A stretch of DNA of 64,000 nt, from the NCBI GenBank assembly GCA_002269645.1, contig NIVC01000038.1, positions 868,001-932,000 of the forward strand, in the 5' to 3' direction. This DNA is from Macrostomum lignano. Taxonomy: Eukaryota. Each line of letters opens with the position of its first letter. The stretch's first letter is position 1. Shown piece after piece: positions 23,418-55,989 of this stretch. The notes beneath the pieces were generated by a model. That model did no database searches and was not told the DNA's origin. It was given only the letters and a program-made list of their open reading frames with translations. Made by a program: the position numbers and the translations under genes.

Positions 23418-23480
23418 GTCTGTCTGTCTCTGTCTGTCTGTGTCTGTCTGTGTCTGTCTGTCTCTGTCTGTCTGTCTGTC
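23092..23480. repeat. (CTGT)n microsatellite, degenerate
   Basis: Direct reading. Confidence 0.95.
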
Positions 23481-31140: not shown

Positions 31141-31404
31141 TCACACTCCAAAGAAAATTTTATTGATGGTTTCTTCCGGCAGATTCGTATTAGAAACGGC
31201 CACGGCTCTGACCAAACCTTGCAGCATGTAGTTGCCGTTGTACCGCCAGCCCACGTGGACGCAGGCTCCGGCTTGGTTGAAGCTGTTCGTCCGAGCGAAG
31301 ACGCCGAGCTTTGACATTTTCAGCTTCGTGATTTGGAGGCTCTTTTGAGCATTGCAGCTGACTAGCAGGGCACTCAAAACTATTAAGAAGAAGACAGTAT
31401 TCAT
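31141..31404 (-). CDS. Lectin-like family copy F: 87-aa in-frame internal-deletion derivative of copy D
   Basis: The first 32 aa are identical to D (MNTVFF...KMSK) and are joined to D-like C-terminal residues (GVFARTNSFNQAGACVHVGWRY...); net 246 codons missing; upstream region homologous to D. Confidence 0.75.
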   Translation of the reverse strand: MNTVFFLIVLSALLVSCNAQKSLQITKLKMSKLGVFARTNSFNQAGACVHVGWRYNGNYMLQGLVRAVAVSNTNLPEETINKIFFGV

Positions 31405-35192: not shown

Positions 35193-35595
35193 TGTCTCCG
35201 ACCCACACAGCGCTGAAGTGCTTGTTCGCAGCGATCGCGTCGTACTCCGAGTCCACCACGGTCTCGCAGCTGCTATCAGCGGCCACTCCCTCAGTCGATG
35301 TCGTGGAGGTCAAGCTGAGCGGGCGACACACCTCACCGAAGCGGAACAGCGCGCACGAGGCGTCTCGCTTGTTCCACTGCACCACGCCGACGCTGCCGAG
35401 ACGGAACGACCGACTCGACACGAAGCAGTCGAGCAGAGAGGCGGAGGGTCGCGGCAGTTGCCACACCGACAGTGACAAGTTCAGACACCCCTGATTGACT
35501 TCTTTATATTTCGTAATGCTGGAGAACTTTTTGCATTCGCAGCTGGTGCAGAAGACGGTCAGAGCTGCCAGAACCGCCGCCAGGGCTGCCTTCAT
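35155..35595 (-). pseudogene. Lectin-like family copy E, 3'-truncated and fused to the LINE
   Basis: Own signal peptide MKAALAAVLAALTVFCTSCEC, then the family core up to SAVWVGDRG, then 11 residues read from LINE antisense. Confidence 0.85.
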
Positions 35596-35894
35596 GTTTA
35601 GCATGGCGGTTTGAAGGATTATTTCAGTCTATTGGGTAATACGGTGGGGAACAGATGCGGTTTTCGTTTTGGGAATCGTTTTTAAAGGTGAAATTGGCTC
35701 GACTCTGATTCGCTCTCAGACTTGTAGCAAATCTTGCGATTATTTCCACAATTTCGTCAGGCTATAATTTTATATTATAAAACTAATTGGTAACAGTCTT
35801 TGTCCGTTAATTCGATAGTTCACCAGCATGCTGTCAATCCTCTATGCGAGATTAATGTCAGGGACTCAAATATAAACACTTGCGTCACAAGTTT

Positions 35895-36245
35895 GTCCAC
35901 ACACGGAGAAATTTTGTCCGCACACGGAGATATTTTGTCCGCACACGGAGATATTTTGTCCGCACACGGAGATATTTTGTCCGCACACGGAGAAGTTTTG
36001 TCCGCACACGGAGATATTTTGTCCGCACACGTAGAAGTTTTGTCCGCACACGGAGATATTTTGTCCACACACGGAGATATTTTGTCCGCACACGGAGATA
36101 TTTTGTCCGCACACGGAGATATTTTGTCCGCACACGGAGATATTTTGTCCGCACACGGAGATATTTTGTCCGCACACGGAGAAGTTTTGTCCGCACACGG
36201 AGATATTTTGTCCGCACACGGAGATATTTTGTCCGCACACGGAGA
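35895..36245. repeat. 21-bp minisatellite, about 17 copies
   Basis: Unit TTGTCCGCACACGGAGATATT. Confidence 0.95.
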
Positions 36246-38037: not shown

Positions 38038-38230
38038 TATACTGGAAACAGACACCGCGTCTCTCCTGTTAATAAACTTAATTCACAAAAGTGGCTTCAG
38101 AATGAACTGGACGCCTCCTAATGATCCGCAATGGTCCAGCCCAATGAAGCGCTGAGCCCTGGGAGTTCTCTTCAGGTGCAGGACCCAGGTGCAAGACGCC
38201 GTAAGTTCCAGACCTGTGGCGGGGCTGTCC
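38038..38230 (-). pseudogene. Inverted ~190-bp fragment of the lectin-like gene spanning the core/variable boundary
   Basis: Reverse complement reads ..TGLELTASCTWVLHLKRTPRAQRFIGLDHCGSLGG.. and aligns with copy C 48805-48985. Confidence 0.85.
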
Positions 38231-38384
38231 TCAAATGAACAAGCAAAAAAGTCTGCATTTTGTTTAACATGTCCCTCTTGCTTATTTTATGAACTCATGT
38301 GATCGTTGCTTCAAAGTTAGGGCAACTCAACAGCAATTGTAGCGTCAAGGTAAACAAGCCGTCAAAGTTAGAAACAAGCTGCAA

Positions 38385-38412
38385 GAGCCAATGGGAAACT
38401 AAAACCAATCAG
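38385..38412 (+). promoter_or_regulatory. Tandem CCAAT boxes upstream of copy A, conserved upstream of B and C
   Basis: GAGCCAATG...ACCAATCAG here; GAGCCAATG...GCCAATCAG at about 43815-43842 and 48132-48158; ATTGGCT upstream of the minus-strand copies (31525, 35692, 55741). Function is inferred. Confidence 0.55.
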
Positions 38413-38534
38413 AACACCTAAGCTGATCAGCAGAAAGTTAAAAACTCCGATGTGATCTGATGCTGAGGCTCTCCATACTGGCAGACTTCTCTTCTACTGA
38501 CTGACAGAAGCTTACAATACATGTACGTCACAAA

Positions 38535-39548
38535 ATGTCCAGCCTCCTACATCTCGCTGTTCTGTGCGCCCTGCTCTCGGACTCTGACTGTGTAAACGGA
38601 GACAAAATTACACAGCACAGAGTAGCCAACAATCACTGCCTGAACTTTTCTGTGTCTTCTTGGCAGAAGCCTTCGCCCTCTGCATCAATGCTCGACTGCT
38701 TCGTGTCGAGTCGGTCGTTCCGTCTCGGCAGCGTCGGCGTGGTGCAGCGAAACAAGCGAGACGCCTCGTGCGCGCTGTTCCGCTTCGGTGAGGTGTGCCG
38801 CCTGCTCAACTTGACCAGCTCGTCTACATCGACTGAGGCAGTGGCCACTGAGAGCACCTGCGAGACCGTGGTGGACTCGGAGTACGACGCGATCGCTGCG
38901 AACGAGCACTTCAGCGCTGTGTGGGTCGGAGACAGGGGACCGGCGCTGGAGAACCTGGTGTGCGGCTCCAAGGGACAGAGGAACCCCATGAAGTCGCTCA
39001 ATGTGACCTGGACGAGTGAGGGCGCTCGCATGGACGGAGTCTCGTCTCGGCTGTGGGTGGACGACCCCACAGGTCTGGACTTCACGGCGTCCTACACCTG
39101 GTTGCTGCACCTGAAGAGAACTCCAAGGGTTCAGTGCTTCATTGAGCTTGACAATTCTGGATCAATAGGAAGCTCATTCTTAAGCCACTTTTGGGAATAT
39201 TGCCGTGGTTCATCAGAAACGCGATGTCTGTTTTCCAATATTGGCTACCTAAACTGGCTCCAGACGGGCACTGTGCTGCCCGCCGACCCTGAGCGCTTCT
39301 TCATCGCTGGCTTGAAAACCGATAAGCCGTCTGGTGAACGCCGATTTCTGCTCGGATCCGCGTTCTTGACCGAGCCGCTGTACTCTGGCGGCGGTTCCGC
39401 ATTTAAATATAACAATGCTGGCGCCTGCATCAAGATCGGCTGGCGGTCTCCAGGCCAGTTCATATTGAATGGCGTCATTCGCGCCGTCGCTGTGGCCAAC
39501 TCGGCTGTGACTGAGCAGGCGGTGCGACAGCTGCTTCAGCAGCCCTGA
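38535..39548 (+). CDS. Secreted PAN/apple-like plus LamG/ConA-like protein, copy A, 337 aa, single exon
   Basis: Signal peptide; CLN..DC..SCALF..C..C module; jellyroll signature ARMDGVSSRLWV..LDFTASYTW..LK ... KIGWR..LNGVIRAVAVANSAVTEQAVRQL. Domain calls are by pattern only. Confidence 0.85.
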   Translation: MSSLLHLAVLCALLSDSDCVNGDKITQHRVANNHCLNFSVSSWQKPSPSASMLDCFVSSRSFRLGSVGVVQRNKRDASCALFRFGEVCRLLNLTSSSTSTEAVATESTCETVVDSEYDAIAANEHFSAVWVGDRGPALENLVCGSKGQRNPMKSLNVTWTSEGARMDGVSSRLWVDDPTGLDFTASYTWLLHLKRTPRVQCFIELDNSGSIGSSFLSHFWEYCRGSSETRCLFSNIGYLNWLQTGTVLPADPERFFIAGLKTDKPSGERRFLLGSAFLTEPLYSGGGSAFKYNNAGACIKIGWRSPGQFILNGVIRAVAVANSAVTEQAVRQLLQQP

Positions 39549-40459
39549 AGCTTTGGCTTGGTTGTTGTGAGAAGTTGAAAAATTAATAATTTGTTGCAAC
39601 AATATTTTATTTGAGCTTTTATGTTCTTTACGATTATCTTAACTGTTATCTGTGCTTCTTTATGCGGCTATTTTACCCACTATCGTAAATGTATCTAATC
39701 GCTTTTAATTACGGATAGCGTAACGATTTGTTTTTTTAATTCTCTTTAGTAAGCTCTGTGTTATGTCTCTTGAGAGAGAGCTATTGGTGTAAATCACAAG
39801 GGCCGATGGTGATTTTGGTCATGAGAAGTCTCGTATTTCAGTCGCTTTGTGTTTTGAAGCAATAATAGTTTTGTAGTGGAAGATTTTCATTTTAATAACT
39901 ATTGATTTACATATCATTATCAATGCCTTAGATTTTTTAATAAAGGGCAAAGCTTTATCATTGCTATTGACAGCTCTTGACATGCTGTAAACCCAATTTC
40001 TGCATGCGCTTTAATATGTACGGTACTACGAAGTTGAGTTAAAAGTACTGCTGTAGCCTCGGTCTGAGCGCAGGAGCCAAATCTTTTTTTGTTTTACGTG
40101 GCTCCAGTGCTCGGGCCGGGGGTTTTAGACGCTGGCGGATCTGGTCTGATCTGATCTTTATCTCTATTATTGCCCCTATTTTTCTTTGGCGAGTCTGTAA
40201 TCCTGTCTTAACATGCTCGTATCACAAAGTGCCTTAGCGAACTTAGCTCTTTGCTATAGATAACAGTATGCTCCTATTGTCCTTATCTATTTATTTACTC
40301 TACGGAAGATTTATTGCGTCGTAAAAGAGCTCATGCGCAGAATTACTTTTTCTGTTTATTTTTCTCAATCATTAAAACCATCAACCGTTTCAATTTTGTG
40401 CTCGTAATTTATTTAATGACTTGCTGAACCTTACTTTTTGGTAATGAAGCAAATGGAAC

Positions 40460-40602
40460 CATTGACCAGTGTGAACCAGTGACCAGTGTGAACCAGTGAC
40501 CAGTGTGAACCAGTGACCAGTGTGATCCAGAGACCAGTGTGAACCAGTGACCAGTGTGATCCAGTGACCAGTGTGAACCAGTGACCAGTGTGAACCAGTG
40601 AC
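40460..40602. repeat. 17-bp minisatellite in the flank module of copy A
   Basis: Unit AGTGTGAACCAGTGACC. Confidence 0.9.
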
Positions 40603-41019
40603 TTGCGGCGCAATTAGTGTGACAGTGAGCTCACAGGTTATAGCATTGAAAGGCCAGAAGTGTCAAAAGCTCTGGACATATGACTCTTTTTGCACTGAGC
40701 AGCTGGAAACGATGGAGTTCACGTTCCCCCGTACTACTCTTTAGTAGTCTAGCAGCCACAAGGTATAGGGCGTTCTCATCTCCACACAGTTCATCACACT
40801 CTCGCCGTGAATTGTTTATTATTTAGTAATTCTTGATCTATCAGGCATCTTTTCTGCTTACACCCTCTGCCTATCTTGGCGGAGTCAATAAAATGCAAAG
40901 ATCACTGCTGAAAGATATTCGCTGAAATCAGGAAGCACAGCGACACTTTATTGAAAGTTGCAGAGATGATTTGCTGTAGGCAAGGTGCACTTAGCCGTAG
41001 GTTCCCATTTAAGACTGTA

Positions 41020-41825
41020 GCTTAGGATGTAAACTACTAGAAATATCGAAACCCTGCTAGCTAGGCTCAAGGACTACTCAAGTAACATATATATAGGACG
41101 CTACACTCGAAATCTATGGTAAATGTTTTGAAGGCAACTTTTCGCCGAAAAATACACTACAGAGATAGGAGATTTCAATTTTTAAAGAAAAAAATTGTTA
41201 TTGCTTTTGATAGGAGGCAGATCCAGTGTTTATCTTTTGATCTGTTGTGCCTTTCTTATTGCTCTATCGATATTCATAAAGCTTTTCGTTCAGAAATAGT
41301 TTTACACGTAAAGGCAGGTTTCACCGGAAAAATACACTACGGAAATAGGAAATTTCACGATTTTCAACCCTAAAACAGTGATTGGGTCTCTTAACAGTGT
41401 CAGAGAAAGTCCTAATCGCACTATTTTGTGCCTCACATTCTGCTCTAACGACGCATTAATCGATTTTTCATGTTAAATTGGTCTTGTCATTATTTTAAGT
41501 GACAGACCAATTTAACCGGTAGTGTATTTTTCCGGTGAAACCTGTCTTTAAAACTATTTCTGAACGAAAAGCTTTATGAATATCGATAGAGCAATAAGAA
41601 AGGCACAACATATCAAAAGATGAACATTGGATCTGCCTCCTATCGAAAGCAATAACAATTTTTGTGCTTAAAAATGAAAACTTCCTATCTCTGTAGTGTA
41701 TTTTTCGGCGAAAAGTGGCCTTCAAAACATTTACCATGGATTTCGAGTGTTGCGTCCTTCTACTTAAGTTGTCCTGGGCTAGGCTGTCGGGAGGATGGCG
41801 TTATATTTTTAATTTATCCTAGCAA
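41020..41825. mobile_element. Foldback/MITE-like long inverted repeat
   Basis: Arms 41095-41345 and about 41515-41758 are close reverse complements, with weaker pairing out to about 41020/41825. A fragment recurs at about 46725-46805. Confidence 0.8.
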
Positions 41826-43957
41826 ACTCGAAAAGATACTTTTTTTAGTGTTGAGGGTTTTTACTATTAAATGTCTGTCTGGAAGGTGACAAAATTGTCG
41901 AGAGCATGCACCGGTAGTTGAATAAACTGTAACCAGACATCTTTTCTTGATTATTAAAAGGATTATTCACTCGAAAAATGTCATATGGATCAACTACTTT
42001 CTTTTATTGTTATTCCAAAGCTCTGAGCAAATATATAATTCTTTGTTATGCGTTATGACTAACCATAAGCACAATATAAATTTGTTGGCACGCATTTTTC
42101 TAAGAGCTGTGCATGGCCAGTTATTGACACAGAAATAACTGCTTCTGACATTCTGAGAAGTTGACATTTTGTTTTTCTTCAGCAAATTGTGCTCAAACGA
42201 GATTCTATTGTCTGAGAATGTCTGAAAATTGTGATTAAATCAGACTTCAGTAAGGAAATGGTTTTTTAGTATCGGCTACTAACAGTAGCATGCTAGACTA
42301 CTAAAAGTAATATAACGGAACCTAAACTCCAAGTTATCCAGATGTGAGCAGTGCTGAAGTACACAGTTTGGTGATTTGATCCAAGGCATTTCTCATTTTG
42401 CAGACTTGATATCAGGTAATACCTGAAAAGTCGAAAAATTCCATCAAAGTTTCTTTTTTTTAATTATTCCATAGAAAAATGGTATATGATTTTCGGCGAT
42501 TGCACGTCAGTAAATAGTACCAGTAAATAATGCATTGGATCAAGCATGAGTAGGAGAGTGAAATAGGATAATCCACGAGTCCAATAGGTTTAAGATAAAC
42601 ATACTTTTAGGGGTAAAAGGTCACGGGAGACACAGAAACCTTATGTGATTAATGGCCTGTCAAAAAAATGAGAAAAAATTACTGTAATCATGTGATTTTC
42701 CCAGTGCGCACGGGTCCGAATGCGAGGTTGGTCGGCTGATACCTTAACACATGTGGTTATTTGTGATCCGCAAATTAATAAGTGACACAAAAGGTAAGAA
42801 GAGAATATACATGTAGGAGAGAGGAAAGGATATGAGAAGACATGGCTGGAAAAAGAGAGTGCCATTCCTACTGAAAGTAGCAAGTAAAGTGCAAAGGAGC
42901 GATCTCATGGAGGAAAAAGCTTTAATGACGCTTAAAGTGACGAAATAAAGCCCACTTTCTAGCCTACTCAGAATGCTTGGTTATTTCAGACTACTAGCAA
43001 AAGTAGTGATTAATGAATATTAGGAGAAAATGTACCGAAAACAAATGCAAAATATTTGATGCTTGATTTTGATTTGACTTTGATTTGATTCAACTTTTTA
43101 AAGCTGAATATGCAATTTGATTTAATTTTTGCAAGAGATTTATCACACGTACTACTACGCGATCATATATAAAAATTCCTGATTAAACCTCGGGAAGCTC
43201 CGTCCTTCGCTCCAAAGCTCCGGCTTTGACGATGTACCTATCGGAAGATATCAGTATGGTAGCTGACATCTTAGACAAATCATTTGCAAGTATAGCAGCT
43301 TTGCAAGATGCTGATTTAGGAAGTTGAAAAGTCGCCTGCTTGGTACGTAGCAGCTAGGAGCAAACTCATTCATAGCCGAAAAAGCAGGATTGATTTGAAT
43401 CTCAGCAGGACTTCTTACGATGCAAAAAGCGTTCTCTTTCAAGAAAGTAAAATCCACCAACCCCGAAACTTTTTCTCCATCAAACCCGCAGCTTCGCGGA
43501 AGCCATCCTTTGTTGGCTCGGCAAACTACCGTTGCGAGTGAGAGGAAGCGAGTTTGCCTTGCAAGACAAAGAAGATGGATTTCTAGAATTCGCGAACAGT
43601 CAGGAAACATCACTGCTTCCGCTAAATATGTTGCCTCGTTAGGAGGCTGTGAACATGAAAAAAAGCCTGTATTGTTCAAGCTACAATGCATCTCGCTTGC
43701 TTTTCTTTGACTCGAATGGTGATCGATCGTTGCCTCAAAGTCAGAACTCTGGCAACCCGAAGCAGAAGTTGCAGCATCAAGAAAAACAGGCCGTCAAAGC
43801 TATAGACAGGTTGCTGGAGCCAATGAGCAACAAAGCCAATCAGGACAATTTCACTGATCTGATCAGTGAACTATATCTGTGACAAAACAGATACCCACAC
43901 TTTCAAGACACGTGGCTTTTCTTCTACTGACTCACAGAAGCTTCATCACGCCACAAA

Positions 43958-44971
43958 ATGTCAAGGCTCCTACATCTCGCTGTTCTGTGCGCCCTGCTCT
44001 CGGTCTCTGACTGTGTGAACGGAGACAAAACTACAAAGCACAGAGTAGCCAACAATCACTGCCTGAACTTGGCGCTCTCGGTGTGGCGGCTGCCGCGACC
44101 CTCCGCCTCCCTGCTCGACTGCTTCGTGTCGAGTCGGTCGTTCCGTCTCGGCAGCGTCGGCGTGGTGCAGCGGAACAAGCGAGACGCCTCGTGCGCGCTG
44201 TTCCGCTTCGGTGAGGTGTGCCGCCTGCTCAACTTGACCAGCTCGTCTAAACCAACTGAGGGAGTAGCCGCTGAGAGCACCTGCGAGACCGTGGTGGACT
44301 CGGAGTACGACGCGATCGCTGCGAACGAGCAGTTCAGCGCTGTGTGGGTCGGAGACAGGGGACCGGCGCTGGAGAACCTGGTGTGCGGCTCCCATGGACA
44401 GAGGAACCCCATGAAGTCTAGCGGTGTCTCGTGGACGAACGAAGGCGCTCGCATGGACGGAGTCTCGTCTCGGCTGTGGGTGGACGACATCGAAGGTCTG
44501 GACTTCACGGCGTCCTACACCTGGCTGCTGCACCTGAAGAGAACTCCCAAGAAACAGTGCTTCATCGAGCTGGACAATTGCGGATCAATAGGAAGCTCAT
44601 ACTTAAGCCACTTTTGGGAGTATTGCCATGGTACAGGGGAGACGCGATGTCTGTTTTCCAATATTGGCGACAAAAACTGGCTCCAAACCGGCTCTGCGCT
44701 GCCCGCCGACCCTGAGCGCTTCTTCATCGCTGGCTTGACGAACGATAAGCCGTCGGGTGAACGCCGATTTCTGCTTGGATCCGCTTTCTTGACCGAGCCG
44801 TTGTACTCTGGCGGCGGTTCCGCATTCAAATATAACGACACTGGCACCTGCATCAAGATCGGATGGCGGTACCCAAGCCAGTTCATATTGAATGGCGTCA
44901 TCCGCGCCGTCGCCGTGGCCAACTCAGCTGTGACTGAGCAGGCGGTGCGGCTGCTGCTTCAGCAGCCCTGA
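43958..44971 (+). CDS. Secreted PAN/apple-like plus LamG/ConA-like protein, copy B, 337 aa
   Basis: Colinear with copy A; intact ORF. Confidence 0.85.
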   Translation: MSRLLHLAVLCALLSVSDCVNGDKTTKHRVANNHCLNLALSVWRLPRPSASLLDCFVSSRSFRLGSVGVVQRNKRDASCALFRFGEVCRLLNLTSSSKPTEGVAAESTCETVVDSEYDAIAANEQFSAVWVGDRGPALENLVCGSHGQRNPMKSSGVSWTNEGARMDGVSSRLWVDDIEGLDFTASYTWLLHLKRTPKKQCFIELDNCGSIGSSYLSHFWEYCHGTGETRCLFSNIGDKNWLQTGSALPADPERFFIAGLTNDKPSGERRFLLGSAFLTEPLYSGGGSAFKYNDTGTCIKIGWRYPSQFILNGVIRAVAVANSAVTEQAVRLLLQQP

Positions 44972-46074
44972 AGCTTAATTTTGGTTTTGAGATGTTTAAA
45001 AAAGAATAATTGTAATTTACATCATACGTGAATAATTATCTGAACTGTTTTATGTGTCTTTTTTAATAGTTATTTTACCCAAGATTGAAATTACGCTATA
45101 CTCGTATTTCTTAATAGTTCTTGCTTTAAAGGTAGCTTGAAAACTATTATTTCTTTCTAACTCCATTTCTTTTGCACCATTCAATCTTTTGCTGGAAATT
45201 TTTGTTTTTATACTCGTAAATTATTGTACAACTCATATAGCCTCGGTCTGGTGACAGGAAGCCATTTTTGTTTGTGTGTGGCTTCTGTGTTCGGGCACTC
45301 GCTGGGAGATCTGATCGAGCGCAGCTCCCTGAGTCTCCGACATCTCCTGCCCAAACACTGGCAACCACTATCTTTTTTGTTGCGCAACCGATTTGTTATT
45401 GTTTTCCCTATGTTGTTCTCGATGATTGACCGGTTTTTCTCTTTTTAGATTTTTTGTTCACAGATTGTATCTAACAGACTCCCGGATTTGCGTCGTTGGC
45501 TGTCTGAATGCACCGATCCAGTATAAATCCTCATTTTTCCTCACTTTCCTGGCGTGCGCCACGTGATAATTGTATCTTTAGAAACAGGTCAGTGACGTCA
45601 GAATACCAGAGGCCAATCAGAGAGAGGGAGTCATTGCAATGACCTTTGAGAGAGTCACGTGAATTCGCCTTAACCGTCTACGAAACTGACCATACTGAGG
45701 ACGGTACCTGCATCAGCTTCTTCAAGCCTGCAGCATCTGTTCTCTCTCTCTACCTCTCTCTTTCTCTCTGTCTCTCTGTGGCTGAGTCTATAATCCTGTC
45801 TGTACATGCTTGCTTGCCTCGCATGGGGTCTTAACCCACTTGGCTCTTTGCTAGGAATAAGAGTATGCTCTGATTGTCTTAATTCATTAATTTATTTACT
45901 CTATACAGAAATAAATAAAAGATCAAATGCACCGAATTATTTATTTTCTGTTTATTTTCCTCCGTAATTACCGCCATCAACTGTCTCACCTTTTTACTCG
46001 TAATTTAATTATTATTGACTTGCTAAACCGTTTTGGTGATTAAGCATAGGGATCCTGTTGGAAGATGTTAACCT

Positions 46075-46405
46075 GTGACCATTGTGAACCAGTGACCAGT
46101 GTGAACCAGTGACTAGTGTAAACCAGTGACCAGTGTGAACCAGTGACTAGTGTAAACCAGTGACCAGTGTGAACCAGTGACTAGTGTAAACCAGTGACTA
46201 GTGTGAACCAGTGACCAGTGTGAACCAGTGACCAGTGTGAACCAGTGACCAGTTTGAACCAGTGACTAGTGTAAACCAGTGACCAGTGTGAACCAGTGAC
46301 TAGTGTGAACCAGTGACTAGTGTGAACCAGTGACCAGTGTGAACCAGTGACCAGTGTGAACCAGTGACCAGTGTGAACCAGGGACCAGTGTGAACCAGTG
46401 ACTGG
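46075..46405. repeat. 17-bp minisatellite in the flank module of copy B
   Basis: Unit AGTGTGAACCAGTGACC, about 19 copies. Confidence 0.92.
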
Positions 46406-47526
46406 CGGCGCAATTAGTGTGACAGTGAGCTTGCAGGTTAGCATTGAAAGGCCAGAAGTGTCAAAAGCTCTGGACATATGACTCTTCTTGCACTGAGCAG
46501 CTGGAAACGATGGAGTTCACGTTCCCGCATACTACTCTTAGTACATGTAGTCTAGCCGCCACAAGGTATAGGGTGTGCATTGCGCTTTCTTCTTCACACA
46601 GTTCATGACACTCTCTCGCCGTGAATTGTTTATTATTCACTAATTCTCGACCTACTAGGCATCATTCACATACACCCTCTGCATGTCTGTCTTGTCAGCG
46701 TCAGCGTAAATTGTTATTGATTTTGATAGGAGAAAGACCCAATGTTCATCTTTTGATATGTTGTGCCTTTCTTATTGCTCTATTGATATTCATAAAGCAT
46801 TTGTTTAAAAATTAGGATTCAATGTTCAATTCTTATTCTACGTACATTTGCATGTCTCCTGTGCCTAAAAATCTTTAAAATGGCACAGCTCGGCTCATTG
46901 GTTTTATGAATCCATTTTGTCATTCTTAGCTGACTGTGTAACAATATGTGTAACAGAGATGATAAAATAGATTCACAAAACCAATAAATCGAGCTGTGCC
47001 ATGCACCGGAAATGTACGTAGAATAAAAAATTAGCATAGAATCCTAATTTTCTGAACCAGAAGCATATATCTTTTGCGATTATATATAGCAAAAGTAGTG
47101 ATCAATAAATAGTAGAAAAAAATGTTAATCAGCAATTAATGGAAGTCAATTGAAATTGACAAATTGCTGATAAAACCTCTGGGAACTCCGTCTTCTGTAG
47201 GGTTTTGAGGATGTACGTACATGTATCAGAAGATATCAGGATCGTAGCTGACCTCCTAGACCAATTTATTGGCAAGTATAGCAGCTTAGCAAGATGCTGA
47301 TTTAGGAAGCTGAAAAGTCGCCTGACTACTAGGAGCTAGGAGCTATTTATAGCCAAATAAGCAGGAATGAGTTGCATATCAGCATGACTTCTTTTGACTC
47401 AAAAAGTGGTTTCTTTCAAAAAGGTAATATAATACTAATGATAATTGATTACACCTGCCTGAGCAGATGTGCAACCGACAGCTCAGCCGCAGCTATTGCG
47501 CGGCGCATCTGAAGGCTGCGTACGGC

Positions 47527-47729
47527 TGTTCAGTCCATGGACTGGGGGGTCGCCACACACACCCTCAATTACCCCAGCTAATGCTTGTACACATTCTACA
47601 GCTGGATAAACTGAAGCAATGCAGAGTTGAGTGTCTTGCTCAAGGACACAAATTTTTCCGAGTGAGTCAAGAATCGATCCCCCGACCTTCAAGTCGTGAA
47701 TCCGACGCTCTGACCACTAGGCTATAACC
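47527..47729 (-). mobile_element. tRNA-derived CORE-type SINE
   Basis: Element strand has box A TAGCCTAGTGGTC, box B-like GGATCGATTC, and CORE-like GTGTCCTTGAGCAAGACACTCAACTCTGCATTGCTTCAGTTTATCCAGCTGTA. Confidence 0.8.
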
Positions 47730-48272
47730 ATTCCTTTAAAAAACATGAAGCCATCAACTCCGGGACTTTTTCTCCATCCAACCCGCAGCTTCGCAGTCAA
47801 CTCCGCATAAACGCGGAAGCCATCCTTTGTTGGCTCGGCAAACTACCGTTGCGAGTGAGAGGAAGCGAGTTTGCCTTGCAAAACAAAGAAGATGGATTTC
47901 TAGAATTCACGACCAGTCAGGAAACATCACTGCTTCCGCTAAATATGTTGCCTCGTTAGGAGGCTGCGAACATGCACAAAAGCCTGTATTGTTCAAACTA
48001 CAATGCATCTCGCTTGCTTTTCGTTGACTCTACGGGTGATCGATCATTGCCTCAAAGTCAGAATTCAGGCAACCCGCTGCAGAAGCTGTGCGTCAAGGTA
48101 AACAGGCCGTCAAATTATAGACCGATTGCTGGAGCCAATGAGCAACAAAGCCAATCAGGACAATTTCACTGATCTGGTCAAGAATGCATAACTGCGACAA
48201 AACAGATGCTGAGGCTTTCAAGACAAGCGAATTCTCTTCTACTGACTGACAGAAGCTACATCACGCCACAAA

Positions 48273-49304
48273 ATGTCAAGGCTCCTACATCTCGCTGTTC
48301 TGTGCGCCCTGCTCTCGGTCTCTGACTGTGTAAACGGAGACAAAACTACACAGCACAGAGTAGCCAACAATGACTGCCTGAACTTGTCGCTCTCGGTGTG
48401 GCAAATGCCGCGAGCCTCCGCCTACCTGCTCGACTGCTTCTTGTCGAGTCGGTCGTTCCGTCTCGGCAGCGTCGGCGTGGTGCAGCGGAACAAGCGAGAC
48501 GCCTCGTGCGCGCTGTTCCGCTTCGGTGAGGTGTGCCGCCTGCTTAACATGACCAGCTCGTCTACACCGACTGAGGGAGTGGCCGCTGAGAGCACTTGCG
48601 AAACCCTGGTGGACTCGGAGTACGACGCGATCGCTGCGAACGAGCACTTCAGCGCTGTGTGGGTCGGAGACAGGGGACCGGCGCTGGAGAACCTGGTGTG
48701 CGGCTCCCATGGACAGAGGAACCCCATGAGGTCCAGTGGTGTCTCATGGACGAACGAAGGCGCTCGCATGGACGGAGTCTCGTCTCGGCTGTGGGTGGAC
48801 GACCCCACAGGTCTGGACTTCACGGCGTCCTACACCTGGGTGCTGCACCTCAAGAGAACTCCAAGGGTTCAGTGCTTCATCGAGCTGGACAATTGCGGAT
48901 CATTAGGAGGCAGCTCATTCTTAAGCCACTTTTGGGAATATTGCCGTGGTTCATTAGAGACGCGATGTCTTTTTTCCAATATTGGCGGCGATAAATGGGT
49001 GGTGCACACGGGCTCTGTGCTGCCCGCCGATCCTGAGCGCTTCTTCATCGCTGGCTTGTCAACAGATAAGCCGTCAGGTGAACGCCAATTCCTGCTCGGA
49101 TCCGCGTTTTTGACTGAGCCCCTGAAATCTGGCAACGGGTCCACATTAAAATATAACGACACTGGCGCCTGCGTCAAGATCGGCTGGCGGGATGCAAGCT
49201 CGTCAGCGTTCAACGGATTTTTCCAGGGCGTCATCCGCGCAGTCGCCATGACGAACTCGGCCGTGACTGAGCAGGCGGTGCGGCAGCTGCTTCAGCAGCC
49301 CTGA
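48273..49304 (+). CDS. Secreted PAN/apple-like plus LamG/ConA-like protein, copy C, 343 aa
   Basis: Colinear with A and B, with small in-frame insertions confined to the C-terminal domain. Confidence 0.85.
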   Translation: MSRLLHLAVLCALLSVSDCVNGDKTTQHRVANNDCLNLSLSVWQMPRASAYLLDCFLSSRSFRLGSVGVVQRNKRDASCALFRFGEVCRLLNMTSSSTPTEGVAAESTCETLVDSEYDAIAANEHFSAVWVGDRGPALENLVCGSHGQRNPMRSSGVSWTNEGARMDGVSSRLWVDDPTGLDFTASYTWVLHLKRTPRVQCFIELDNCGSLGGSSFLSHFWEYCRGSLETRCLFSNIGGDKWVVHTGSVLPADPERFFIAGLSTDKPSGERQFLLGSAFLTEPLKSGNGSTLKYNDTGACVKIGWRDASSSAFNGFFQGVIRAVAMTNSAVTEQAVRQLLQQP

Positions 49305-49732
49305 AGCTTTGACACCTTTCAATGTTGTTCGGGCACTTTTTGTATTTATATTCGTAAAAATTATTGTGCAACAATTACATAGCCTCGGTCTGGGCACAAG
49401 AAACCATTTTTGTTTGTGTGTGGCTCCTGTGCTCGGGCACTCGCTGGGAGAACAGGTCGATTGCAGCTCCCTGCATCTCCGACATCTGCCCCAATATTCC
49501 CTGCCAGCTGTCTTTTTGTTGAACAACCGATTTTTCTAGTTTTCTCTCTATTTTTCTCGCTCCTTGCTTCTGTTGTTCACTGACCCTAACTAACAGACTC
49601 CCGGATTTGCGTTACTGGCTATCTGAATGCGCCAATTCAATAAATCCTCATTTTTCCTCACTTTTTCTGCGTGCCCCAGGTGACAATTCTATTTTTAGAA
49701 ACAGGTTAGTGACGTCAGAAGATTGGGTCCCA

Positions 49733-49735
<3 letters not shown>

Positions 49736-49792
<57 letters not shown>
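49736..49792. repeat. (GA)n microsatellite
   Basis: Direct reading. Confidence 0.9.
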
Positions 49793-49793
<1 letters not shown>

Positions 49794-50544
49794 TCATAGC
49801 AATAACCTTAAAGAGAGTCACGTGAGTCGCCTAAAACGGCTACGCCGATCCTACTGAAGACTTACCTGCATCAGCTTCTTCAAGCCTGCAGCATCAGCAT
49901 CAGCAGCCAGTTCTCTCTCTCTGGCGCCCCCGGTGAGTGGCGCCCCCGGTGAGTCTTTAATCCTGGCTTCAGGCCGAATCGCACTTAGATTATTGCTACT
50001 TCCTAGACATTAGAGTCTGCTCTTACTGTCCTTACGTGTATTCATTTATTCACTCCAGAGCGAACTATCAATAATTATGACAACTATCAAGAATAAAAAA
50101 TTAACTATTTCTATAGGGTTGCTTCTTTGCCCTTCTTAATTTCTTCTGGAGGTCTTAATGCCTTTATAATTTAGTTCTTAATAGCACACTAAACCTTATA
50201 TTTTCATATGCTTATACATTCATATCATATTTTCGTATTTTCGTACTGTATATACATTTCGATTTCCCTCATACTACTCTTAGTAGCAAAATGTGTAATC
50301 ACGCATCATTTCAACCACACCCTATTGTCAAAACGACGTATAACGTTATCCGTCGATGTAATGTAAAAGAACATACTTATCAGCGATGTCGATAGACTGT
50401 AGGAACGTCGGCCAGAGAGAATCTAATTTGAAATAGCTGTAGTAACTTCGACCAAAACAGAGTTGCTTCAGTTTCAATTTACAACAAAAAAATACTTCTC
50501 CGCTAGCTACACAGTGACCATAACAGGGGTGAGAAGTCAAAGAG

Positions 50545-51005
50545 AGCCTCTCTAGGCGATAGCCCTCAAAACGTCACAACCCCCTGCTTGGTCCGGGGCG
50601 CCAGCATCAATCAAAAGCCGGTCAGGGTATCTCGCCGTTCGCCCTTGGCCTCGCCTACGCGGTATCTGCTGCTTGAGCAGCAGCACTTCGTTTAGCGGCT
50701 CAGGGCAAGCGGGCCTCCGACCGGCTGGCGTGGCCAACCAGTCGAAGTCGTCTCCCGCGCAGCAGGTCAGAAGGCCGCATCAGGCCTCGCATCGCTGCCT
50801 GGGCCGCTGCGCACGCCGAACGCCTCACTCAGCTTGGCCGCATGCGCAGCGTCCAGCTGCCTCTTTTTCAGGTGTCCGTCAGGGTCCAGGTCTCGGCGTT
50901 GTACAACAAGACAGTCTCAACGACTGCCTGAAACAGCCGAGCCCCGAGCCCGTCATCCAGGGCCTCAGAATGGAGCACGAAGCTCACAGCTCGTCAGGCC
51001 ATCAA
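50545..51005 (-). mobile_element. RTE-like LINE 3' fragment
   Basis: LFQAVVETVLLYNAETWTLT and LLRGRRLRLVGHASR, motifs typical of the RTE RT C-terminal region; stops and frameshifts. Confidence 0.75.
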
Positions 51006-54000
51006 GCAGCTAATTAAATTTATAAATTTAGTTACTACAATAAGGTTGAGCTGTTGTCAAGTTATATTGCTCAAAATTCTAATCTGGCTAGTACTTTCTA
51101 AATCGACCTACAATTAAAATCGCATGATAGACAGAACAGAGGGCTTTCAGTTTTAAGCACCAATTCATCAAACCTTCGTCAATACTAGCTAAAATTTCTG
51201 AATTGTAACTTTAGAAAGTATGATTTGTTTACTGTAGGGTAAAGGCATTGTTAATTTCGATAAAAGCATTTCTCTGCTTTTGTTATCGGTCGTTTAAAAT
51301 GCGGGCTGAAAGCAAATAGTCTGGCCCTCAGAAACCCGCCTGCTAAACCCCCATGCAGCATGCAGTCGGAATTACGGTCTTGTTGCTGCTACGGTTATGC
51401 TGAGTCTTAGATTTAGGCTTATTTTGGATTTGCCGATGTGTTTATCCTAATATTGGCTTTGCTGGCTTTCTGACTTTGGTACATCGCTGTCTGAGGCCTG
51501 ACGTTCCCCCTAACCCTATTAGTATGTAAAAATTAAAGAACGAACCACGACAATCCAATTCTAACTTAAAAAGTAGACAATAACCAAAAGATGTTGAGAA
51601 TAGATAAAAAATGTTTGGCAAGTCTCATAGCTGTATTAAGTAAATTAATCCCCAATTTCGCCCAGAATTGTCATGCAGAGTAAAAAAAATTGCGAGAAAC
51701 AAGGTGGGAGGGACGTCAAATATATTGAGAGCATGAGACCATATGGTGCACAGTAGTAGGTCATAATTAGTCATTTATATTTTGCTTCACTCTTACCATG
51801 TATCTAGCAAAATATGGTACTCACTATTTTTAGTGAGATCTATAACTCAACTTTGTGACGAACAGAAGCATTAGGGTCACAAAAGATTATCATGCTTATC
51901 AAGTAGGTTGATATTACAGCTAGGTAATACCCTATTTGAAATTAATGTTCAGTAAGTTCAGATCAAATGCATTACGATACTCCGCATTGCATACGGCTTC
52001 AAACTTCTGAAAAGCAGGTCGGTCCTTTGAAAGGTCGTTTTTTTGTTACAATATATGTTGGCAATGACAATTTTTGGTACAATATATTCCTATAAGATAC
52101 TGGTGTGATGCTTTTTCTACTATTTCATTTACTGTAAATTACTGTCCAACAAACTATTACTCAACTTTGCTCAACTGGACACTGGCTGGAAAAAAAGACG
52201 ATATTGTACGACTAATCAGTGTCCGGGCCATGGTTCTTCTAGTTTATGAGAACCCAGGCACTGGATTCTGGGTCGAGCGCTGTTTCACCGGCCTCCCCAA
52301 CATCTCTTTCACTAACGCCCTTCGCCCTCACAGAATTGCGAAGGTCTCACAGGCAGGATAATGCGAGGGAAAGACAACCATGATAGGAATGGCAACTTGT
52401 CACTCAAGCTTTCTCGCTTTCTCAAAGAAACAGGGGATGCTTTTCCTTGCAACTTACATGTACCATATTTATACTGCGCGGAGCAATCTCAGCTGTATGG
52501 TCTTGTTAAAAATTTTGTACATGTATCTAATCCACTATTTGTGAGGTTCTTCAGCCATTCAGAAGGCACCGGTTCGAATTTGGTACTCACATTGTGGCTC
52601 TTTGATACTTCTAAAACTAACTTTATTATGCTTGCAGTGAATGGCTTGCATTCGACTGTTATAGGCAAAAATATTCAGGCTGCGGTCGATGAGATAAAGA
52701 GGCGGGCGACTTAGACACTTAAGGATTTAAACACCCTTGCTAGTTAGCAATTGACTCAGCTAAAATGAATAGACGGGTTATTGGTATGAGTTCGTAAGTG
52801 AGTCACCTACTCAAAAGCTTTTAAAGCTTCAAGTCCATTATAATACATGCAGCATGCAGCCGACAAAAGGCCAAGTGCCTGTCTGTCCTCGTCAGCAGCA
52901 GAGACGACAATTCGACAAAATATAAAAGTATGTATTGTACTTCCGTGCTGAAAAATGGAACAGCACCTATCTCCATACAGTGGTGCCATTTTTTCGTAAA
53001 GCCAGCTTCATGAGCAGTTGGCATCGCCATGAATTTTATGACGGTTGGACAAAGGCGAGAAGTCTGCATGATTAAATTCCTACATTATTTTAAGAATCGG
53101 TGTTGATTGCTTATTTTGGCGCCGAAGGCGCTCTATTTTGGGGCCCTGAGGCAAAATTATTGACTTACAAAACGGTACACAAATTGGGTGGGGCGGGGAG
53201 ACAAAGCATTATGGGAAGCCCCCCCCCCATAGCTTTCTGGGCGGGGGCATGGACAGGCCGACGGGGCGATAGCTGTAAACATATTCATGGCCAAGAGCTG
53301 TTTTTCATATCCTAATTATCATTTTTGAATATATTTAAGTCGGCCAATTTGCAAATTTGATGACATTATCGTTTTCAACGAGATGGACTTTTTGCTTCCC
53401 CGTCCCCCATTTGTTTGTTTATGCGGCCTTTAAATGAATGCATACAAGCTTTCAGCAAAATTAGATTCTTTCTTGCTTCAGGAGAAGCAAGTCAACAATT
53501 AAATTAGTGAATTTAAAAGGGCCCCACTTATTTGGGAACTTCGATTTAAATTTCGTTGCTCTTTTACTTGGAGCAGTGGTTACAAGCCTCTTAATAGATT
53601 TTTTGTTTATTCAGCAGTTGAATTACGTAGTTTGGACGAAGCAACTAAAGATAATAGTATAGGAATATAGGAATATTTTGTATTACTGTAGCTCAATGTT
53701 AGGTCGTGAAATAATCACAATGGCATGTGTGAGTACTAAATTTAAGAATAGTTTAATTACATGCTTTTTGGGACTGTGCATCCGGTTATAGAGTATCCTG
53801 TACAGCAATCTGATTTAAATCATGCGACAATCAGCCGACGGATGGCGTCGTTATACTTCGGTGTAAGATAGAAGTATCATTTTGCCAACAATGTCCATTG
53901 ACGTCGGGTTGTAGGCGGACGTCCTGTTGCTGCACGGGTATGCAAAAATTTGTGCTTGCCGTTCCAGCCTGCGGCGCCCTAATACGAGTTCCTTTTCGAC

Positions 54001-54612
54001 AGCTACCTGTTCTGTCGGTTGACTCTATTGTGGAATGAAAGCAATTTGAAACTCCTCCATTCAAGAACGGCTGATTTAGGCCCCAAATCACCTTGATAAC
54101 AAGGTAATACTTGACAATAAGGATGTATATTATAATTTTGACTCTGAAAAGCCTTTGTTAGAGCTTCCATCCTGAAATTTTAATTACAAATTATTGTTAA
54201 AGCCGAGAAAAAATAAACCGGGTCTACAATAAGCAATTAAACAATAAAGCTGATATTTAAAGGTTATTTATAGCGTTCATATATTACAGCAAGTCTGTAG
54301 GTACACAAGACTATTTAATTAACAGCATCACGGACGGGTAGCTATTTTTTGCAAGGAACGGTCTCGATCGTTTGATGTTAAAATGTTTACAAAATTCATA
54401 TAGATACTCGTAAAAGAACAGATAAAAAAGCGTTCCTGGGCTCATGAAAAATTCAAAAATAGATCGGGAAAACTTGAACAAAATTAACTATAGATCTTTC
54501 CAGAGGGAGTTGGTATAACTGATTTTTCAAATATATCAAATATATAAATTCAAATATTTCAAAAAATAGTTGTTCAAAACCTTTTGTTAATTCCTGACGT
54601 TTTACAATCAAT

Positions 54613-55614
54613 TTACACTCCGAAGAAAATTTTACTGATGGTTTCTTCCGGTAGATTCGTATTAGAAACCGCCACGGCTCTGACCACACCATTAAGCATG
54701 CAGGTGCCGTCATACCGCCAGCCCACATGGATGCAGGCTCCGGCTTGGTTAAAGCTGTTCGTCCGAGCGAAGACGCCGGCAGTCGGTAGAAACTTTGATC
54801 CATAGAAGAAGCGAGTCAGGTTCTGCTGCCTCCTGAATGAGACGCCAGCGATGAAGAACTCGTTCGGGTCCGCAGGCAGCACCGAGCTGGTCTGGAATCT
54901 GGCGAAGTAACCCGGGTTCAGGAAGAGGGCGCGACTCACTCCGGACATTACTGAGTATTCTTGCAGGTGGTCGAGCATGCTGCCGGATCCGATGCAGCTG
55001 CTCAGTTCTAGAAAGCTAGCTAAACCTGGGGTTCTCTTCAGGTGCAGCACCCAGGTGTAGGATGCCGTGAAGTCCAGACCTGTGGGGTCGTCCACCCACA
55101 GCCGAGACGAGACTCCGTCCATGCGAGCGCCCTCACTCGTCCAGGTCACATTGAGCGACTTCACGGGGTTCCTCTGTCCCTCGGAGCCGCACACCAGGTT
55201 CTCCAGCGCCGGTCCCCTGTCTCCGACCCACACAGCGCTGAAGTGCTCGTTCGAAGCGATCGCGTCGTACTCCGAGTCTACCACGGTCTCGCAGCTGCTC
55301 TCAGCGGCCACTCCGGCAGTCGGTGTCGTCGAGGTCATGTTGAGCAGGCGGCACACCTCACCGAAGCGGAACAGCGCGCACGAGGCGTCTCGCTTGTTCC
55401 GCTGCACAACGCCGACGCTGCCGAGACGGAGAGAGCGACTGGACGAGAAACAGTTGATCATTGAGGCCGAGGGCTGAGGCCTCTGCCACACCGCCAACGA
55501 CAAGTTCAGGCACTTACGCTTTGACATTTTCAGCTTCGTGATTTGGAGGCTCTTTTGAGCATTGCAGCTGACTAGCAGGGCACTCAAAACTATTAAGAAG
55601 AAGACAGTATTCAT
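54613..55614 (-). CDS. Secreted PAN/apple-like plus LamG/ConA-like protein, divergent copy D, 333 aa
   Basis: Signal MNTVFFLIVLSALLVSCNA from ATG 55614 (the track ORF extends 27 codons further upstream); core near-identical to A; C-terminal domain strongly divergent. Confidence 0.85.
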   Translation of the reverse strand: MNTVFFLIVLSALLVSCNAQKSLQITKLKMSKRKCLNLSLAVWQRPQPSASMINCFSSSRSLRLGSVGVVQRNKRDASCALFRFGEVCRLLNMTSTTPTAGVAAESSCETVVDSEYDAIASNEHFSAVWVGDRGPALENLVCGSEGQRNPVKSLNVTWTSEGARMDGVSSRLWVDDPTGLDFTASYTWVLHLKRTPGLASFLELSSCIGSGSMLDHLQEYSVMSGVSRALFLNPGYFARFQTSSVLPADPNEFFIAGVSFRRQQNLTRFFYGSKFLPTAGVFARTNSFNQAGACIHVGWRYDGTCMLNGVVRAVAVSNTNLPEETISKIFFGV

Positions 55615-55989
55615 TTCGAGTGTCTTTACAAGTTTAAATATATAGATCGTATATTTGGTTTGGTGTTTTACAGAAATGCATTCAGAATTTATCAATTTAT
55701 TGGACGGAGCTCAGGACTTAGAGATGTTGAAAATGTTTTGATTGGCTGAGATAGTTTGCAACGAATTTCCACAGAGCGGGATTGCTAGACCAAGAGCATC
55801 TGAGGTATACTGCACTTCAGTTGTCCCTGGTTGCATGGTTTAGAATACGCAACAAGCTTTAGCAACAAGTTGTCTACAAGCAAGAAAATGAATAATCACT
55901 AATGCCAATTTGTGTCCTAAAGCTCCAAATTCAGGCCTTAATAGCGCCATGGTACTCTGAAGCCGGGATTGTCCTCCGAAAACTCCACT

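What the first reader, a model, noticed from the sequence alone, without database searches (positions are those of the whole stretch)
38691..55430. Constant-core/variable-tail architecture: homogenised core with a sharp boundary at LHLKRTP
Seen: codons from about LDC to LHLKRTP (A 38691-39124, B 44114-44547, C 48429-48862, D about 55030-55430, and E as far as it extends) are near-identical, including synonymous sites. About 100 bp (GAAGTCGCTCAATGTG...CTTCACGGC) is identical between A and D, although D's leader and tail are highly divergent. Sharing is mosaic: KSLNVTWTSEG in A+D versus SSGVSWTNEG in B+C; DDPTG in A+C+D; RVQC and CRGS in A+C; identical tail ends in A+B. Substitutions and indels cluster after the boundary (YLNWL/DKNWL/GDKWVV/YFARF; RSPG/RYPS/RDASSSAFNG/RYDG). 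Inference: ectopic gene conversion keeps the core constant while putative ligand loops diversify and reshuffle, like a germline variable-receptor system.
Basis: partly seen in the sequence, partly recalled or inferred. Interest (0 to 1): 0.8.

Follow-up and report, generated by a model that had tools for sequence, protein, structure and literature searches.

The report
Flatworm lectin-like genes with homogenised core
A cluster of uncharacterised secreted lectin-like genes in the flatworm Macrostomum lignano keeps its front two-thirds nearly identical between copies by gene conversion. The last 140 codons are anciently divergent, and related gene groups switch at the same codon position; this is a clean new example of a known evolutionary process, not a new kind of system.

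Summary
The window is Macrostomum lignano. It holds four intact intronless paralogs (A, B, C on +, D on -) and three gene fragments.

- **What the genes encode:** a secreted protein with a Cys-containing N-terminal module, a Ser/Thr linker and a ConA-like/LamG jelly roll.
- **The core/tail contrast:** between D and A/B/C, core dS is 0.10-0.21. Leader dS is about 1.1 and tail dS is saturated.
- **Breakpoints:** they sit at about alignment nt 102-126 and 585-591 (max chi-square 187-223).
- **Identical tract:** A 38989-39088 is exactly the reverse complement of D 55064-55163.
- **Best explanation:** region-restricted ectopic gene conversion. D is inverted, so exchange with it must be non-crossover.
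- **New here:** the same constant/variable junction (LxLKR) recurs in a second M. lignano subfamily and in a third subfamily on environmental contigs. It lies inside the jelly roll, not at a domain border.
- **Not supported:** adaptive loop diversification. Among A/B/C, pN/pS stays below 1 wherever pS is above zero. Variable sites are not loop-enriched. The tails are old rather than fast-evolving.
- **Excluded rivals:** antisense ORFs and RNA structure do not explain the conserved core.

This is a new member of a known kind; the closest analog is regional conversion in teleost protocadherin clusters. Moderate interest.

The parts
38535..39548 (+). Paralog A: intact single-exon ORF of 337 aa with signal peptide. 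Homogenised core 38691-39125.
43958..44971 (+). Paralog B: 337 aa. Core 44114-44548.
48273..49304 (+). Paralog C: 343 aa. Core 48429-48863.
54613..55614 (-). Paralog D: 333 aa from ATG MNTVFF, in inverted orientation. Core 55027-55458. Leader and tail are saturated in divergence from A/B/C.
38989..39088 (+). 100-nt tract of A identical to D 55064-55163 (reverse complement), read as the most recent A-D conversion patch. It carries the NVT-type cassette (KSLNVTWTSEG).
35155..35604 (-). Copy E: truncated. It has its own signal peptide (MLNMKAALAAV...), then a core 88-92% identical in nt to A-D over 35188-35487. Homology ends after VWVGDRG.
38046..38229 (-). Fragment F: degenerate pseudogene piece spanning the core/tail junction (about residues 176-234), C-type, with stop codons.
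31141..31404 (-). D-prime: D-type copy with an in-frame internal deletion of residues 33-279, which removes the whole core. An 87-aa ORF is retained. Its 5' flank up to 31545 matches D's flank 55518-55760.
38301..38534 (+). About 230 nt of upstream sequence shared by A, B (43725-43957) and C (48042-48272). B and C share about 500 nt. D's upstream is unrelated.

Best explanation
**What is there.** This is a tandem, birth-and-death cluster of an uncharacterised flatworm gene family. Each gene encodes a secreted protein: signal peptide, a small Cys-containing N-terminal module, a Ser/Thr-rich linker and a ConA-like/LamG-type beta-sandwich.

**How the pattern arises.**
- Recurrent non-reciprocal ectopic recombination (gene conversion) homogenises one segment between paralogs.
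- That segment runs from about codon 35-52 to the turn after strand SYTWLLHLK (codon 197).
- It acts even between copies whose leaders, tails and flanks diverged long ago, and between inverted copies (D versus A-C).
- Conversion tracts stop where homology stops.
- The last 140 codons, two-thirds of the beta-sandwich, therefore persist as old distinct tail types. A short N-terminal block and the linker also stay variable.
- Among the close copies A/B/C, conversion or unequal exchange also shuffles tail segments.

**Shown:**
- the island of synonymous-site identity;
- sharp breakpoints;
- significant tracts;
- mosaicism;
- the fold;
- recurrence of the same junction in three subfamilies.

**Inferred:**
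- the junction is held in place by homology-dependence plus selection against erasing tail differences;
- this gives a constant module with a ligand-facing variable module;
- the proteins bind glycans or other ligands.
For: **Organism and gene set.**
- A neighbouring alpha2delta gene clusters at 90% or more with Macrostomum lignano PAA66888.1.
- The only close relatives of A-D are M. lignano UniProt entries.

**Conversion signal in the window.**
- D versus A/B/C: core dS 0.10-0.21, leader about 1.1, tail saturated.
- Sliding p-distance is 0.00-0.2 in the core and 0.45-0.6 outside it.
- Max chi-square 187-223.
- Synonymous codon differences at identical residues: 7-12% in the core, 59-65% in the tail.
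- blastn finds only a 489-nt island between D and A/B/C and no flank similarity.
- Tract tests: A-D p=1e-4, A-C p=0.003, B-C p=0.005.
- GC3 is 0.79-0.83 in the core and 0.61-0.68 in the tail.

**The core is not simply more constrained.**
- P0003, a paralog whose core is not homogenised, has 45% core and 31% tail identity to A.
- Other distant relatives show 31-49% core and 17-36% tail identity.
- D and P0001 show 89-92% core and 30-45% tail identity.
- At least five leader types and three to four tail types share one core.

**The junction recurs.**
- Six environmental-contig paralogs are near-identical in nt up to LRLKR, then unalignable. Their core dS is 0.02-0.60 and tail dS 1.4 to saturated.
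- M. lignano P0006 and P0029 are 100% identical through MKRQPQVQ, then diverge.
- Identity profiles fall at A residue about 198-201 in all three subfamilies.

**Fold.**
- AF2 gives pLDDT 75-90 over most of residues 150-337.
- Foldseek hits are ConA-like lectin domains.
- Pfam Laminin_G_3 matches 7 of 19 relatives.
Against: - Only four full genes, plus fragments, were available at the DNA level in M. lignano.
- The other subfamilies come from protein models of an older assembly and from short environmental contigs of unknown species.
- No orthologs were available. The classical test (paralogs within a species closer than orthologs between species) could not be run.
- GC3 is also higher in the core of distant relative L001 (0.63 versus 0.49). 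The GC3 signal is therefore not specific evidence for biased conversion.
- Selection maintaining the junction is inferred from its recurrence only.
- No positive selection was detected.
- Expression, ligand and function are unknown.
Confidence: 0.8

Rival explanations
1. Adaptive constant/variable recognition family. The tail is under diversifying selection for ligand recognition. The junction is actively maintained because the core serves a common function. Fragments E, F and D-prime act as donor cassettes.
For: - The same junction occurs in three subfamilies.
- Tail segments are reshuffled among A/B/C.
- Indel and substitution clusters lie at YLNWL and RSPGQF, partly in predicted loops.
- A two-state cassette (NVT-type versus SGV-type) is kept in two subfamilies.
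- The fold is lectin-like.
Against: - Tail omega is 0.30-0.42, and every window with pS above zero has pN/pS below 1.
- Variable sites are not loop-enriched (p=0.33).
- Tail types are saturated at synonymous sites, so they are old, not recently generated.
- The fragments look like ordinary pseudogene debris.
- There are no data on expression or polymorphism.
Confidence: 0.25
2. One-off chimeric events. D, P0001 and E each acquired the core once by a single replacement or recombination. There is no continuing homogenisation.
For: Core divergence between D and A/B/C is not zero (dS 0.10-0.21). That could date a single past event.
Against: - A 100-nt exact A-D tract is nested in an older, 7-12% diverged core, which implies at least two events of different age.
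- Different pairs are closest in different sub-segments.
- The same pattern occurs in three subfamilies and in many paralog pairs with a range of core dS, 0.02-0.60.
Confidence: 0.1
3. There is no conversion. The core is conserved by constraint acting on the nucleotide sequence itself: an overlapping antisense gene, an RNA structure or a regulatory element.
For: Two antisense frames are open for 140-187 codons across the core in every copy.
Against: - Synonymous-codon shuffles give antisense open runs as long or longer (p 0.07-1.0).
- The core RNA folds no better than shuffles (z=+0.73).
- There is no Rfam match.
- Paralog P0003 and the other subfamilies have diverged freely in the core.
Confidence: 0.03
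4. Assembly or polishing artefact. Paralog cross-mapping of reads homogenised the cores in the assembly.
For: The M. lignano genome is repeat-rich and partly duplicated. Environmental contigs of the related subfamily break exactly at the core, showing it behaves as a repeat for assemblers.
Against: - The cores keep copy-specific substitutions and a 3-nt indel.
- UniProt entries P0001 and P0002, whose sequences match none of the window's paralogs, carry the same core with other tails.
- Independent metagenome assemblies show the same architecture.
Confidence: 0.03

Closest known systems
Regional gene conversion in clustered protocadherin variable exons of teleosts (fugu: PMC1852091; zebrafish: Noonan et al. 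2004, Genome Res 14:354, cited there)
   Same: - Tandem arrays of large single-exon coding units.
- One part of the exon is near-identical between paralogs, synonymous sites included, and the rest is divergent.
- GC3 is raised in the homogenised part.
- The homogenised part is interpreted as a constant module and the divergent part as a specificity module.
   Different: - Here the homogenised part is 5'/central and the divergent part 3'. In Pcdh the homogenised part is the 3' end of the variable exons (EC4-EC6 in some genes, per PMC1852091).
- The junction cuts through a single beta-sandwich domain rather than lying between repeated domains.
- The family is an unrelated, uncharacterised secreted ConA-like protein.
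- Exchange also occurs with an inverted copy.
ConA-like lectin/glucanase superfamily, LamG_3 / CBM40-type domains (Pfam PF13385; PDB 5fre, 1ms0 C-terminal domain)
   Same: - Predicted beta-sandwich matches these structures (Foldseek E about 1e-6 to 1e-5).
- The C-terminal motif G-T-V-R-A-V-x-I-x-N-x-x-[LM]-T-x-x-E-I resembles the LamG_3 end motif.
- There is a weak profile hit to CBM40 (E=0.008).
   Different: - A-D themselves have no Pfam hit.
- Sequence identity to any solved structure is about 10-16%.
- No ligand-binding residues could be assigned.
- An extra N-terminal Cys module of unknown fold is present (AF2 pLDDT 42).
Invertebrate diversified secreted recognition families (sea-urchin Sp185/333, snail FREPs, schistosome SmPoMuc); from my own knowledge, not tested here
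   Same: - Clustered, intron-poor paralogs.
- Mosaic block structure.
- Recombination between members.
- Repeats near the genes.
   Different: - No evidence here for immune expression, for dN/dS above 1 or for somatic or individual-level diversification.
- The variable part is old and stable rather than hypervariable.

Membership tests
Region-restricted gene conversion (partial concerted evolution) in a multigene family | Paralogs are physically clustered. | tested here: met
   A, B, C, D plus three fragments lie within 24.5 kb.
Region-restricted gene conversion (partial concerted evolution) in a multigene family | Synonymous-site similarity is confined to a segment, with sharp breakpoints. 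| tested here: met
   Core dS 0.10-0.21 versus more than 1 or saturated outside; max chi-square 187-223.
Region-restricted gene conversion (partial concerted evolution) in a multigene family | Statistically significant shared tracts and mosaic relationships. | tested here: met
   Permutation p=1e-4 (A-D), 0.003 (A-C), 0.005 (B-C); 100-nt exact tract.
Region-restricted gene conversion (partial concerted evolution) in a multigene family | Raised GC3 in the converted region (GC-biased conversion). | tested here: inconclusive
   Core 0.79-0.83 versus 0.61-0.71 outside (p 8e-6 to 0.012). A distant relative shows the same direction of difference.
Region-restricted gene conversion (partial concerted evolution) in a multigene family | In the converted region, paralogs within a species are closer than orthologs between species. 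| not testable with these tools
   No orthologous cluster from another Macrostomum species was reachable. The environmental contigs belong to another subfamily.
ConA-like lectin / Laminin_G_3 superfamily | Beta-sandwich jelly-roll fold. | tested here: met
   AF2 model with pLDDT 75-90 over most of residues 150-337; top Foldseek hits are all ConA-like domains.
ConA-like lectin / Laminin_G_3 superfamily | Significant match to the Pfam model. | tested here: inconclusive
   A-D have no hit. Seven of 19 relatives hit PF13385, best E=1.2e-5. PDB profile hit to CBM40 at E=0.008.
ConA-like lectin / Laminin_G_3 superfamily | Carbohydrate or Ca2+ binding site. | not tested
   No residue-level mapping was possible at 10-16% identity.
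Diversified immune-type or variable receptor systems (FREP, 185/333, VLR-like) | Diversifying selection (dN/dS above 1) in the variable part. | tested here: not met
   Tail omega 0.30-0.42; the highest window ratio with pS above zero is about 0.9.
Diversified immune-type or variable receptor systems (FREP, 185/333, VLR-like) | Variable residues concentrated on exposed ligand-binding loops. | tested here: not met
   Strand versus loop Fisher p=0.33 among A/B/C. Solvent exposure itself could not be computed.
Diversified immune-type or variable receptor systems (FREP, 185/333, VLR-like) | Somatic or individual-level diversification; immune expression. | not testable with these tools
   No reads, transcripts or population data were available.

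The most novel reading that the evidence does not exclude
The family may be a germline-encoded constant/variable recognition repertoire of free-living flatworms. A common N-terminal module, including the first third of a lectin-like beta-sandwich, would be deliberately kept uniform. Anciently diversified C-terminal two-thirds would supply specificities. The junction and a two-state N-glycosylation cassette (NVT versus SGV) would be maintained by selection across subfamilies for a very long time. On this reading it works like an innate immune or mating/self-recognition lectin repertoire.
Probability: 0.25. Interest if true: 0.75.

Novelty: new member of a known kind. Interest (0 to 1): 0.5.

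Why it matters
The cluster gives a very clean, compact natural example of partial concerted evolution. A roughly 435-490-nt island of near-identity sits inside genes that are otherwise saturated in divergence. The end-point falls in mid-domain and recurs in three subfamilies.

That recurrence makes one question testable: are conversion boundaries set only by homology, or held by selection? It also flags an unannotated, lineage-specific secreted lectin-like family in a genetically tractable flatworm model. Candidate roles are in recognition (immunity, reproduction, adhesion).

On the practical side, the homogenised core breaks short-read assemblies and will confound orthology and phylogeny for this family.

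Tried and rejected
- **Antisense coding in the core.** Long antisense ORFs are what the codon usage predicts.
- **RNA structure or a known RNA family.** z=+0.73, and no Rfam match.
- **Pfam on A-D.** No family found.
- **N-terminal module fold.** A dedicated AF2 run gave pLDDT 42, which is unusable, so I made no fold search and dropped my PAN/apple guess.
- **Ancestral intron at the junction.** Contig L002 shows only frameshifts after the junction, which is uninformative. The P0004 gene model that joins two leader+core copies at the junction is most likely a prediction artefact.
- **Exact-protein look-ups.** A, D, P0001, P0002 and P0003 are not on record, so no extra M. lignano DNA could be fetched.
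- **Literature searches.** I searched Macrostomum with gene conversion, laminin G, concanavalin and lectin. Nothing on this family turned up.
- **Core as a mobile insertion.** Rejected, because leader and tail are homologous across the whole family.
- **GC3 as proof of biased conversion.** Downgraded after a distant relative showed the same trend.
Full report
**1. What is in the window**

The region holds four intact, intronless ORFs:
- A 38535-39548 (+)
- B 43958-44971 (+)
- C 48273-49304 (+)
- D 54613-55614 (-, from the ATG of MNTVFF)

Each is 333-343 aa and starts with a signal-peptide-like sequence.

tblastn and blastn also find three remnants:
- **E** (35155-35604, -) has its own signal peptide plus a core, and is truncated after VWVGDRG.
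- **F** (38046-38229, -) is a degenerate piece spanning the junction.
- **D-prime** (31141-31404, -) is a D-type copy with an in-frame deletion of residues 33-279.

The organism is Macrostomum lignano:
- The neighbouring 1241-aa alpha2delta-like gene clusters at 90% or more with PAA66888.1 (BOX15_Mlig015658g3).
- The only close relatives of A-D are M. lignano UniProt entries.

**2. Checking the observation**

| Comparison | Leader | Core (LDCF..LHLKRTP) | Tail |
|---|---|---|---|
| dS, D vs A/B/C | about 1.1 | 0.10-0.21 | saturated |
| p-distance, 60-nt windows, D vs A/B/C | 0.45-0.6 | 0.00-0.2 | 0.45-0.6 |
| Synonymous codon differences at identical residues, A-D | 8/18 | 9/124 | 33/56 |

- Fisher p for the core/tail row is 2e-13 for A-D and similar for B-D and C-D.
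- A two-breakpoint max chi-square gives 187-223, with breaks at alignment nt 102-126 and 585-591.
- A 38989-39088 is exactly the reverse complement of D 55064-55163.
- In that stretch B and C differ from A at 17 consecutive polymorphic sites (permutation p=1e-4).
- Further significant tracts link A-C (p=0.003) and B-C (p=0.005).
- Different pairs are closest in different segments.
- Among A/B/C the core is also more similar than the tail, but modestly (dS 0.10 versus 0.25-0.32; p 0.01-0.05).
- D shares no flanking similarity with A-C. Only a 489-nt island matches.

**3. What the protein is**

- A-D have no Pfam family.
- An exhaustive profile-free search found 20 relatives.
- An alignment-based search added more, all unnamed.
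- Seven of 19 relatives match Pfam Laminin_G_3.
- AlphaFold2 with the family alignment gives a beta-sandwich at pLDDT 75-90 over most of residues 150-337.
- Its Foldseek matches are ConA-like lectin domains: trans-sialidase lectin domain, BoNT Hc-N/NTNH, calreticulin, neurexin LNS, pentraxin and CBM40.
- A profile search of PDB sequences gives a marginal CBM40 hit (E=0.008).
- The N-terminal roughly 100 residues, with conserved cysteines, could not be modelled (pLDDT 42).

The junction LHLKRTP lies in the turn after strand 187-195. It is inside the beta-sandwich, not at a domain border. The 'tail' is therefore two-thirds of the sandwich, not a set of loops.

**4. Constraint cannot explain the core**

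| Relative compared with A | Core identity | Tail identity |
|---|---|---|
| P0003 (M. lignano paralog, not homogenised) | 45% | 31% |
| Other distant relatives | 31-49% | 17-36% |
| D and P0001 | 89-92% | 30-45% |

- At least five leader types (ABC/P0002, D, E, P0001, P0003) exist.
- Three to four tail types exist.
- All except P0003 carry the same core.
- P0002 appears to combine an ABC-type leader with a D-type tail. Its gene model contains a frameshifted stretch, so I give it little weight.

**5. The architecture is family-wide**

*Environmental contigs.*
- Six JGI environmental contigs (L001, L003-L007) encode paralogs of another subfamily. Its closest M. lignano relative is P0015.
- At the nucleotide level they are almost identical from VWVMSDD to LRLKR, then abruptly unalignable.
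- Core dS is 0.02-0.60 and tail dS is 1.4 to saturated.
- Synonymous differences at identical residues are 2-22% in the core and 44-62% in the tail.
- The short contigs all begin inside the core. That is what an assembler does at a repeat.

*A third subfamily.*
- In M. lignano, P0006 and P0029 are 100% identical through MKRQPQVQ and then diverge.

*Shared profile.*
- Identity profiles in common coordinates fall at A residue about 198-201 in all three subfamilies.
- All three also have an N-terminal variable block at about residues 21-60.
- A two-state cassette occurs in both the window subfamily and the environmental subfamily:
  - NVT[WF]TSEG, which carries an N-glycosylation sequon;
  - SGV[SE]WT[NK]EG.

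**6. Mechanism**

The simplest account is recurrent non-crossover gene conversion limited to the segment that is still similar enough to pair.

- D is inverted relative to A-C. Exchange with it cannot be unequal crossing-over without inverting the interval.
- Nested tracts of different ages argue for repeated events: a 100-nt exact patch sits inside a 7-12% diverged core.
- Raised GC3 in the core (0.79-0.83 versus 0.61-0.71) agrees with GC-biased conversion. It is not specific, because a distant relative shows the same direction.
- Homology-dependence alone would keep a boundary once it exists.
- Its coincidence in three subfamilies suggests either an ancestral state faithfully inherited or selection against erasing tail differences. 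That step is inference.

**7. What is not supported**

- Every 15-codon window among A/B/C with pS above zero has pN/pS below 1. Four core windows have zero pS.
- Tail omega is 0.30-0.42.
- Variable sites are not enriched in loops.
- Antisense ORFs over the core are expected from codon usage.
- The core RNA is not unusually structured, and there is no Rfam hit.
- I found no literature on this family.

**8. Comparison and verdict**

The closest described phenomenon is regional gene conversion in teleost clustered protocadherin variable exons. There, too, one part of tandem single-exon units is homogenised at synonymous sites with raised GC3, and the rest stays divergent (PMC1852091).

This case differs in three ways:
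- the family is different;
- the polarity is reversed;
- the junction lies in mid-domain.

It is a new member of a known kind: solidly real, moderately interesting. An open possibility of about 25% is that it is a selected constant/variable recognition repertoire.

Noticed in passing
window 38989-39021 (A), 55131-55163 (D) versus B 44412-44444, C 48727-48759; loci L001, L003-L007: A two-state cassette occurs in two subfamilies whose cores are otherwise only about 38% identical. One state is NVT[WF]TSEG, with an N-glycosylation sequon. The other is SGV[SE]WT[NK]EG. It could be an ancient dimorphism kept despite conversion, or convergence.
   Followed up: partly
window 31141-31545 (-): D-prime is a D-type copy with an in-frame deletion of residues 33-279. 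It still reads as an 87-aa ORF (signal peptide plus the last 54 residues). Its 5' flank matches D's flank.
   Followed up: partly
window 35155-35604 (-): Copy E carries a fifth, distinct signal peptide/leader on the same core. It is truncated after VWVGDRG. An RT-like ORF (33977-34528) and a 21-nt minisatellite (35892-36253) lie nearby.
   Followed up: partly
loci L003, L005, L006, L007 (positions 1-50): Environmental contigs of the related subfamily all start within a few dozen bases of the beginning of the identical core block. The homogenised core behaves as an assembly-breaking repeat.
   Followed up: yes
window 40456-40602 and 46066-46402: The same 17-nt minisatellite lies about 0.9-1.1 kb downstream of A and of B, as part of the duplicated unit. 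An (AG)29 microsatellite lies downstream of C at 49736-49793.
   Followed up: no
window 41095-41340 / 41519-41758: A 246-nt inverted repeat (91% identity) lies between A and B. Each arm has an 80-85-aa ORF (MVNVLKATFRRKIHYRDR...). It is possibly a transposon remnant.
   Followed up: no
window 15271-18996 (-): A 1241-aa alpha2delta-like gene (VWA_N, VWA, Cache) reads as one uninterrupted ORF. It is 58% identical to annelid and 57% to brachiopod and nemertean orthologs. A second M. lignano copy at 90% or more (PAA66888.1) exists elsewhere, consistent with duplicated genome segments.
   Followed up: partly
window 6562-14212 (+); 9240-10287; 21929-23506: An EDRF1-like multi-exon gene (EDRF1_N hit at 6562-7740) is interrupted or flanked by long CTGT-rich simple repeats. 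These read as SVCL... in several frames.
   Followed up: no
window 2217-3395 (-); 31616-33001: A retrotransposon gag-like ORF with a CCHC zinc knuckle, and a 30-nt minisatellite of 46 copies next to D-prime.
   Followed up: no
protein P0004 (M. lignano UniProt A0A1I8H4S8): The gene model joins two leader+core copies head to tail, exactly at the MKRQP junction. This is either two tail-less tandem copies or a predictor splicing at a CAG|GT that happens to sit at the junction. D has CCAG|GT at the same place.
   Followed up: no
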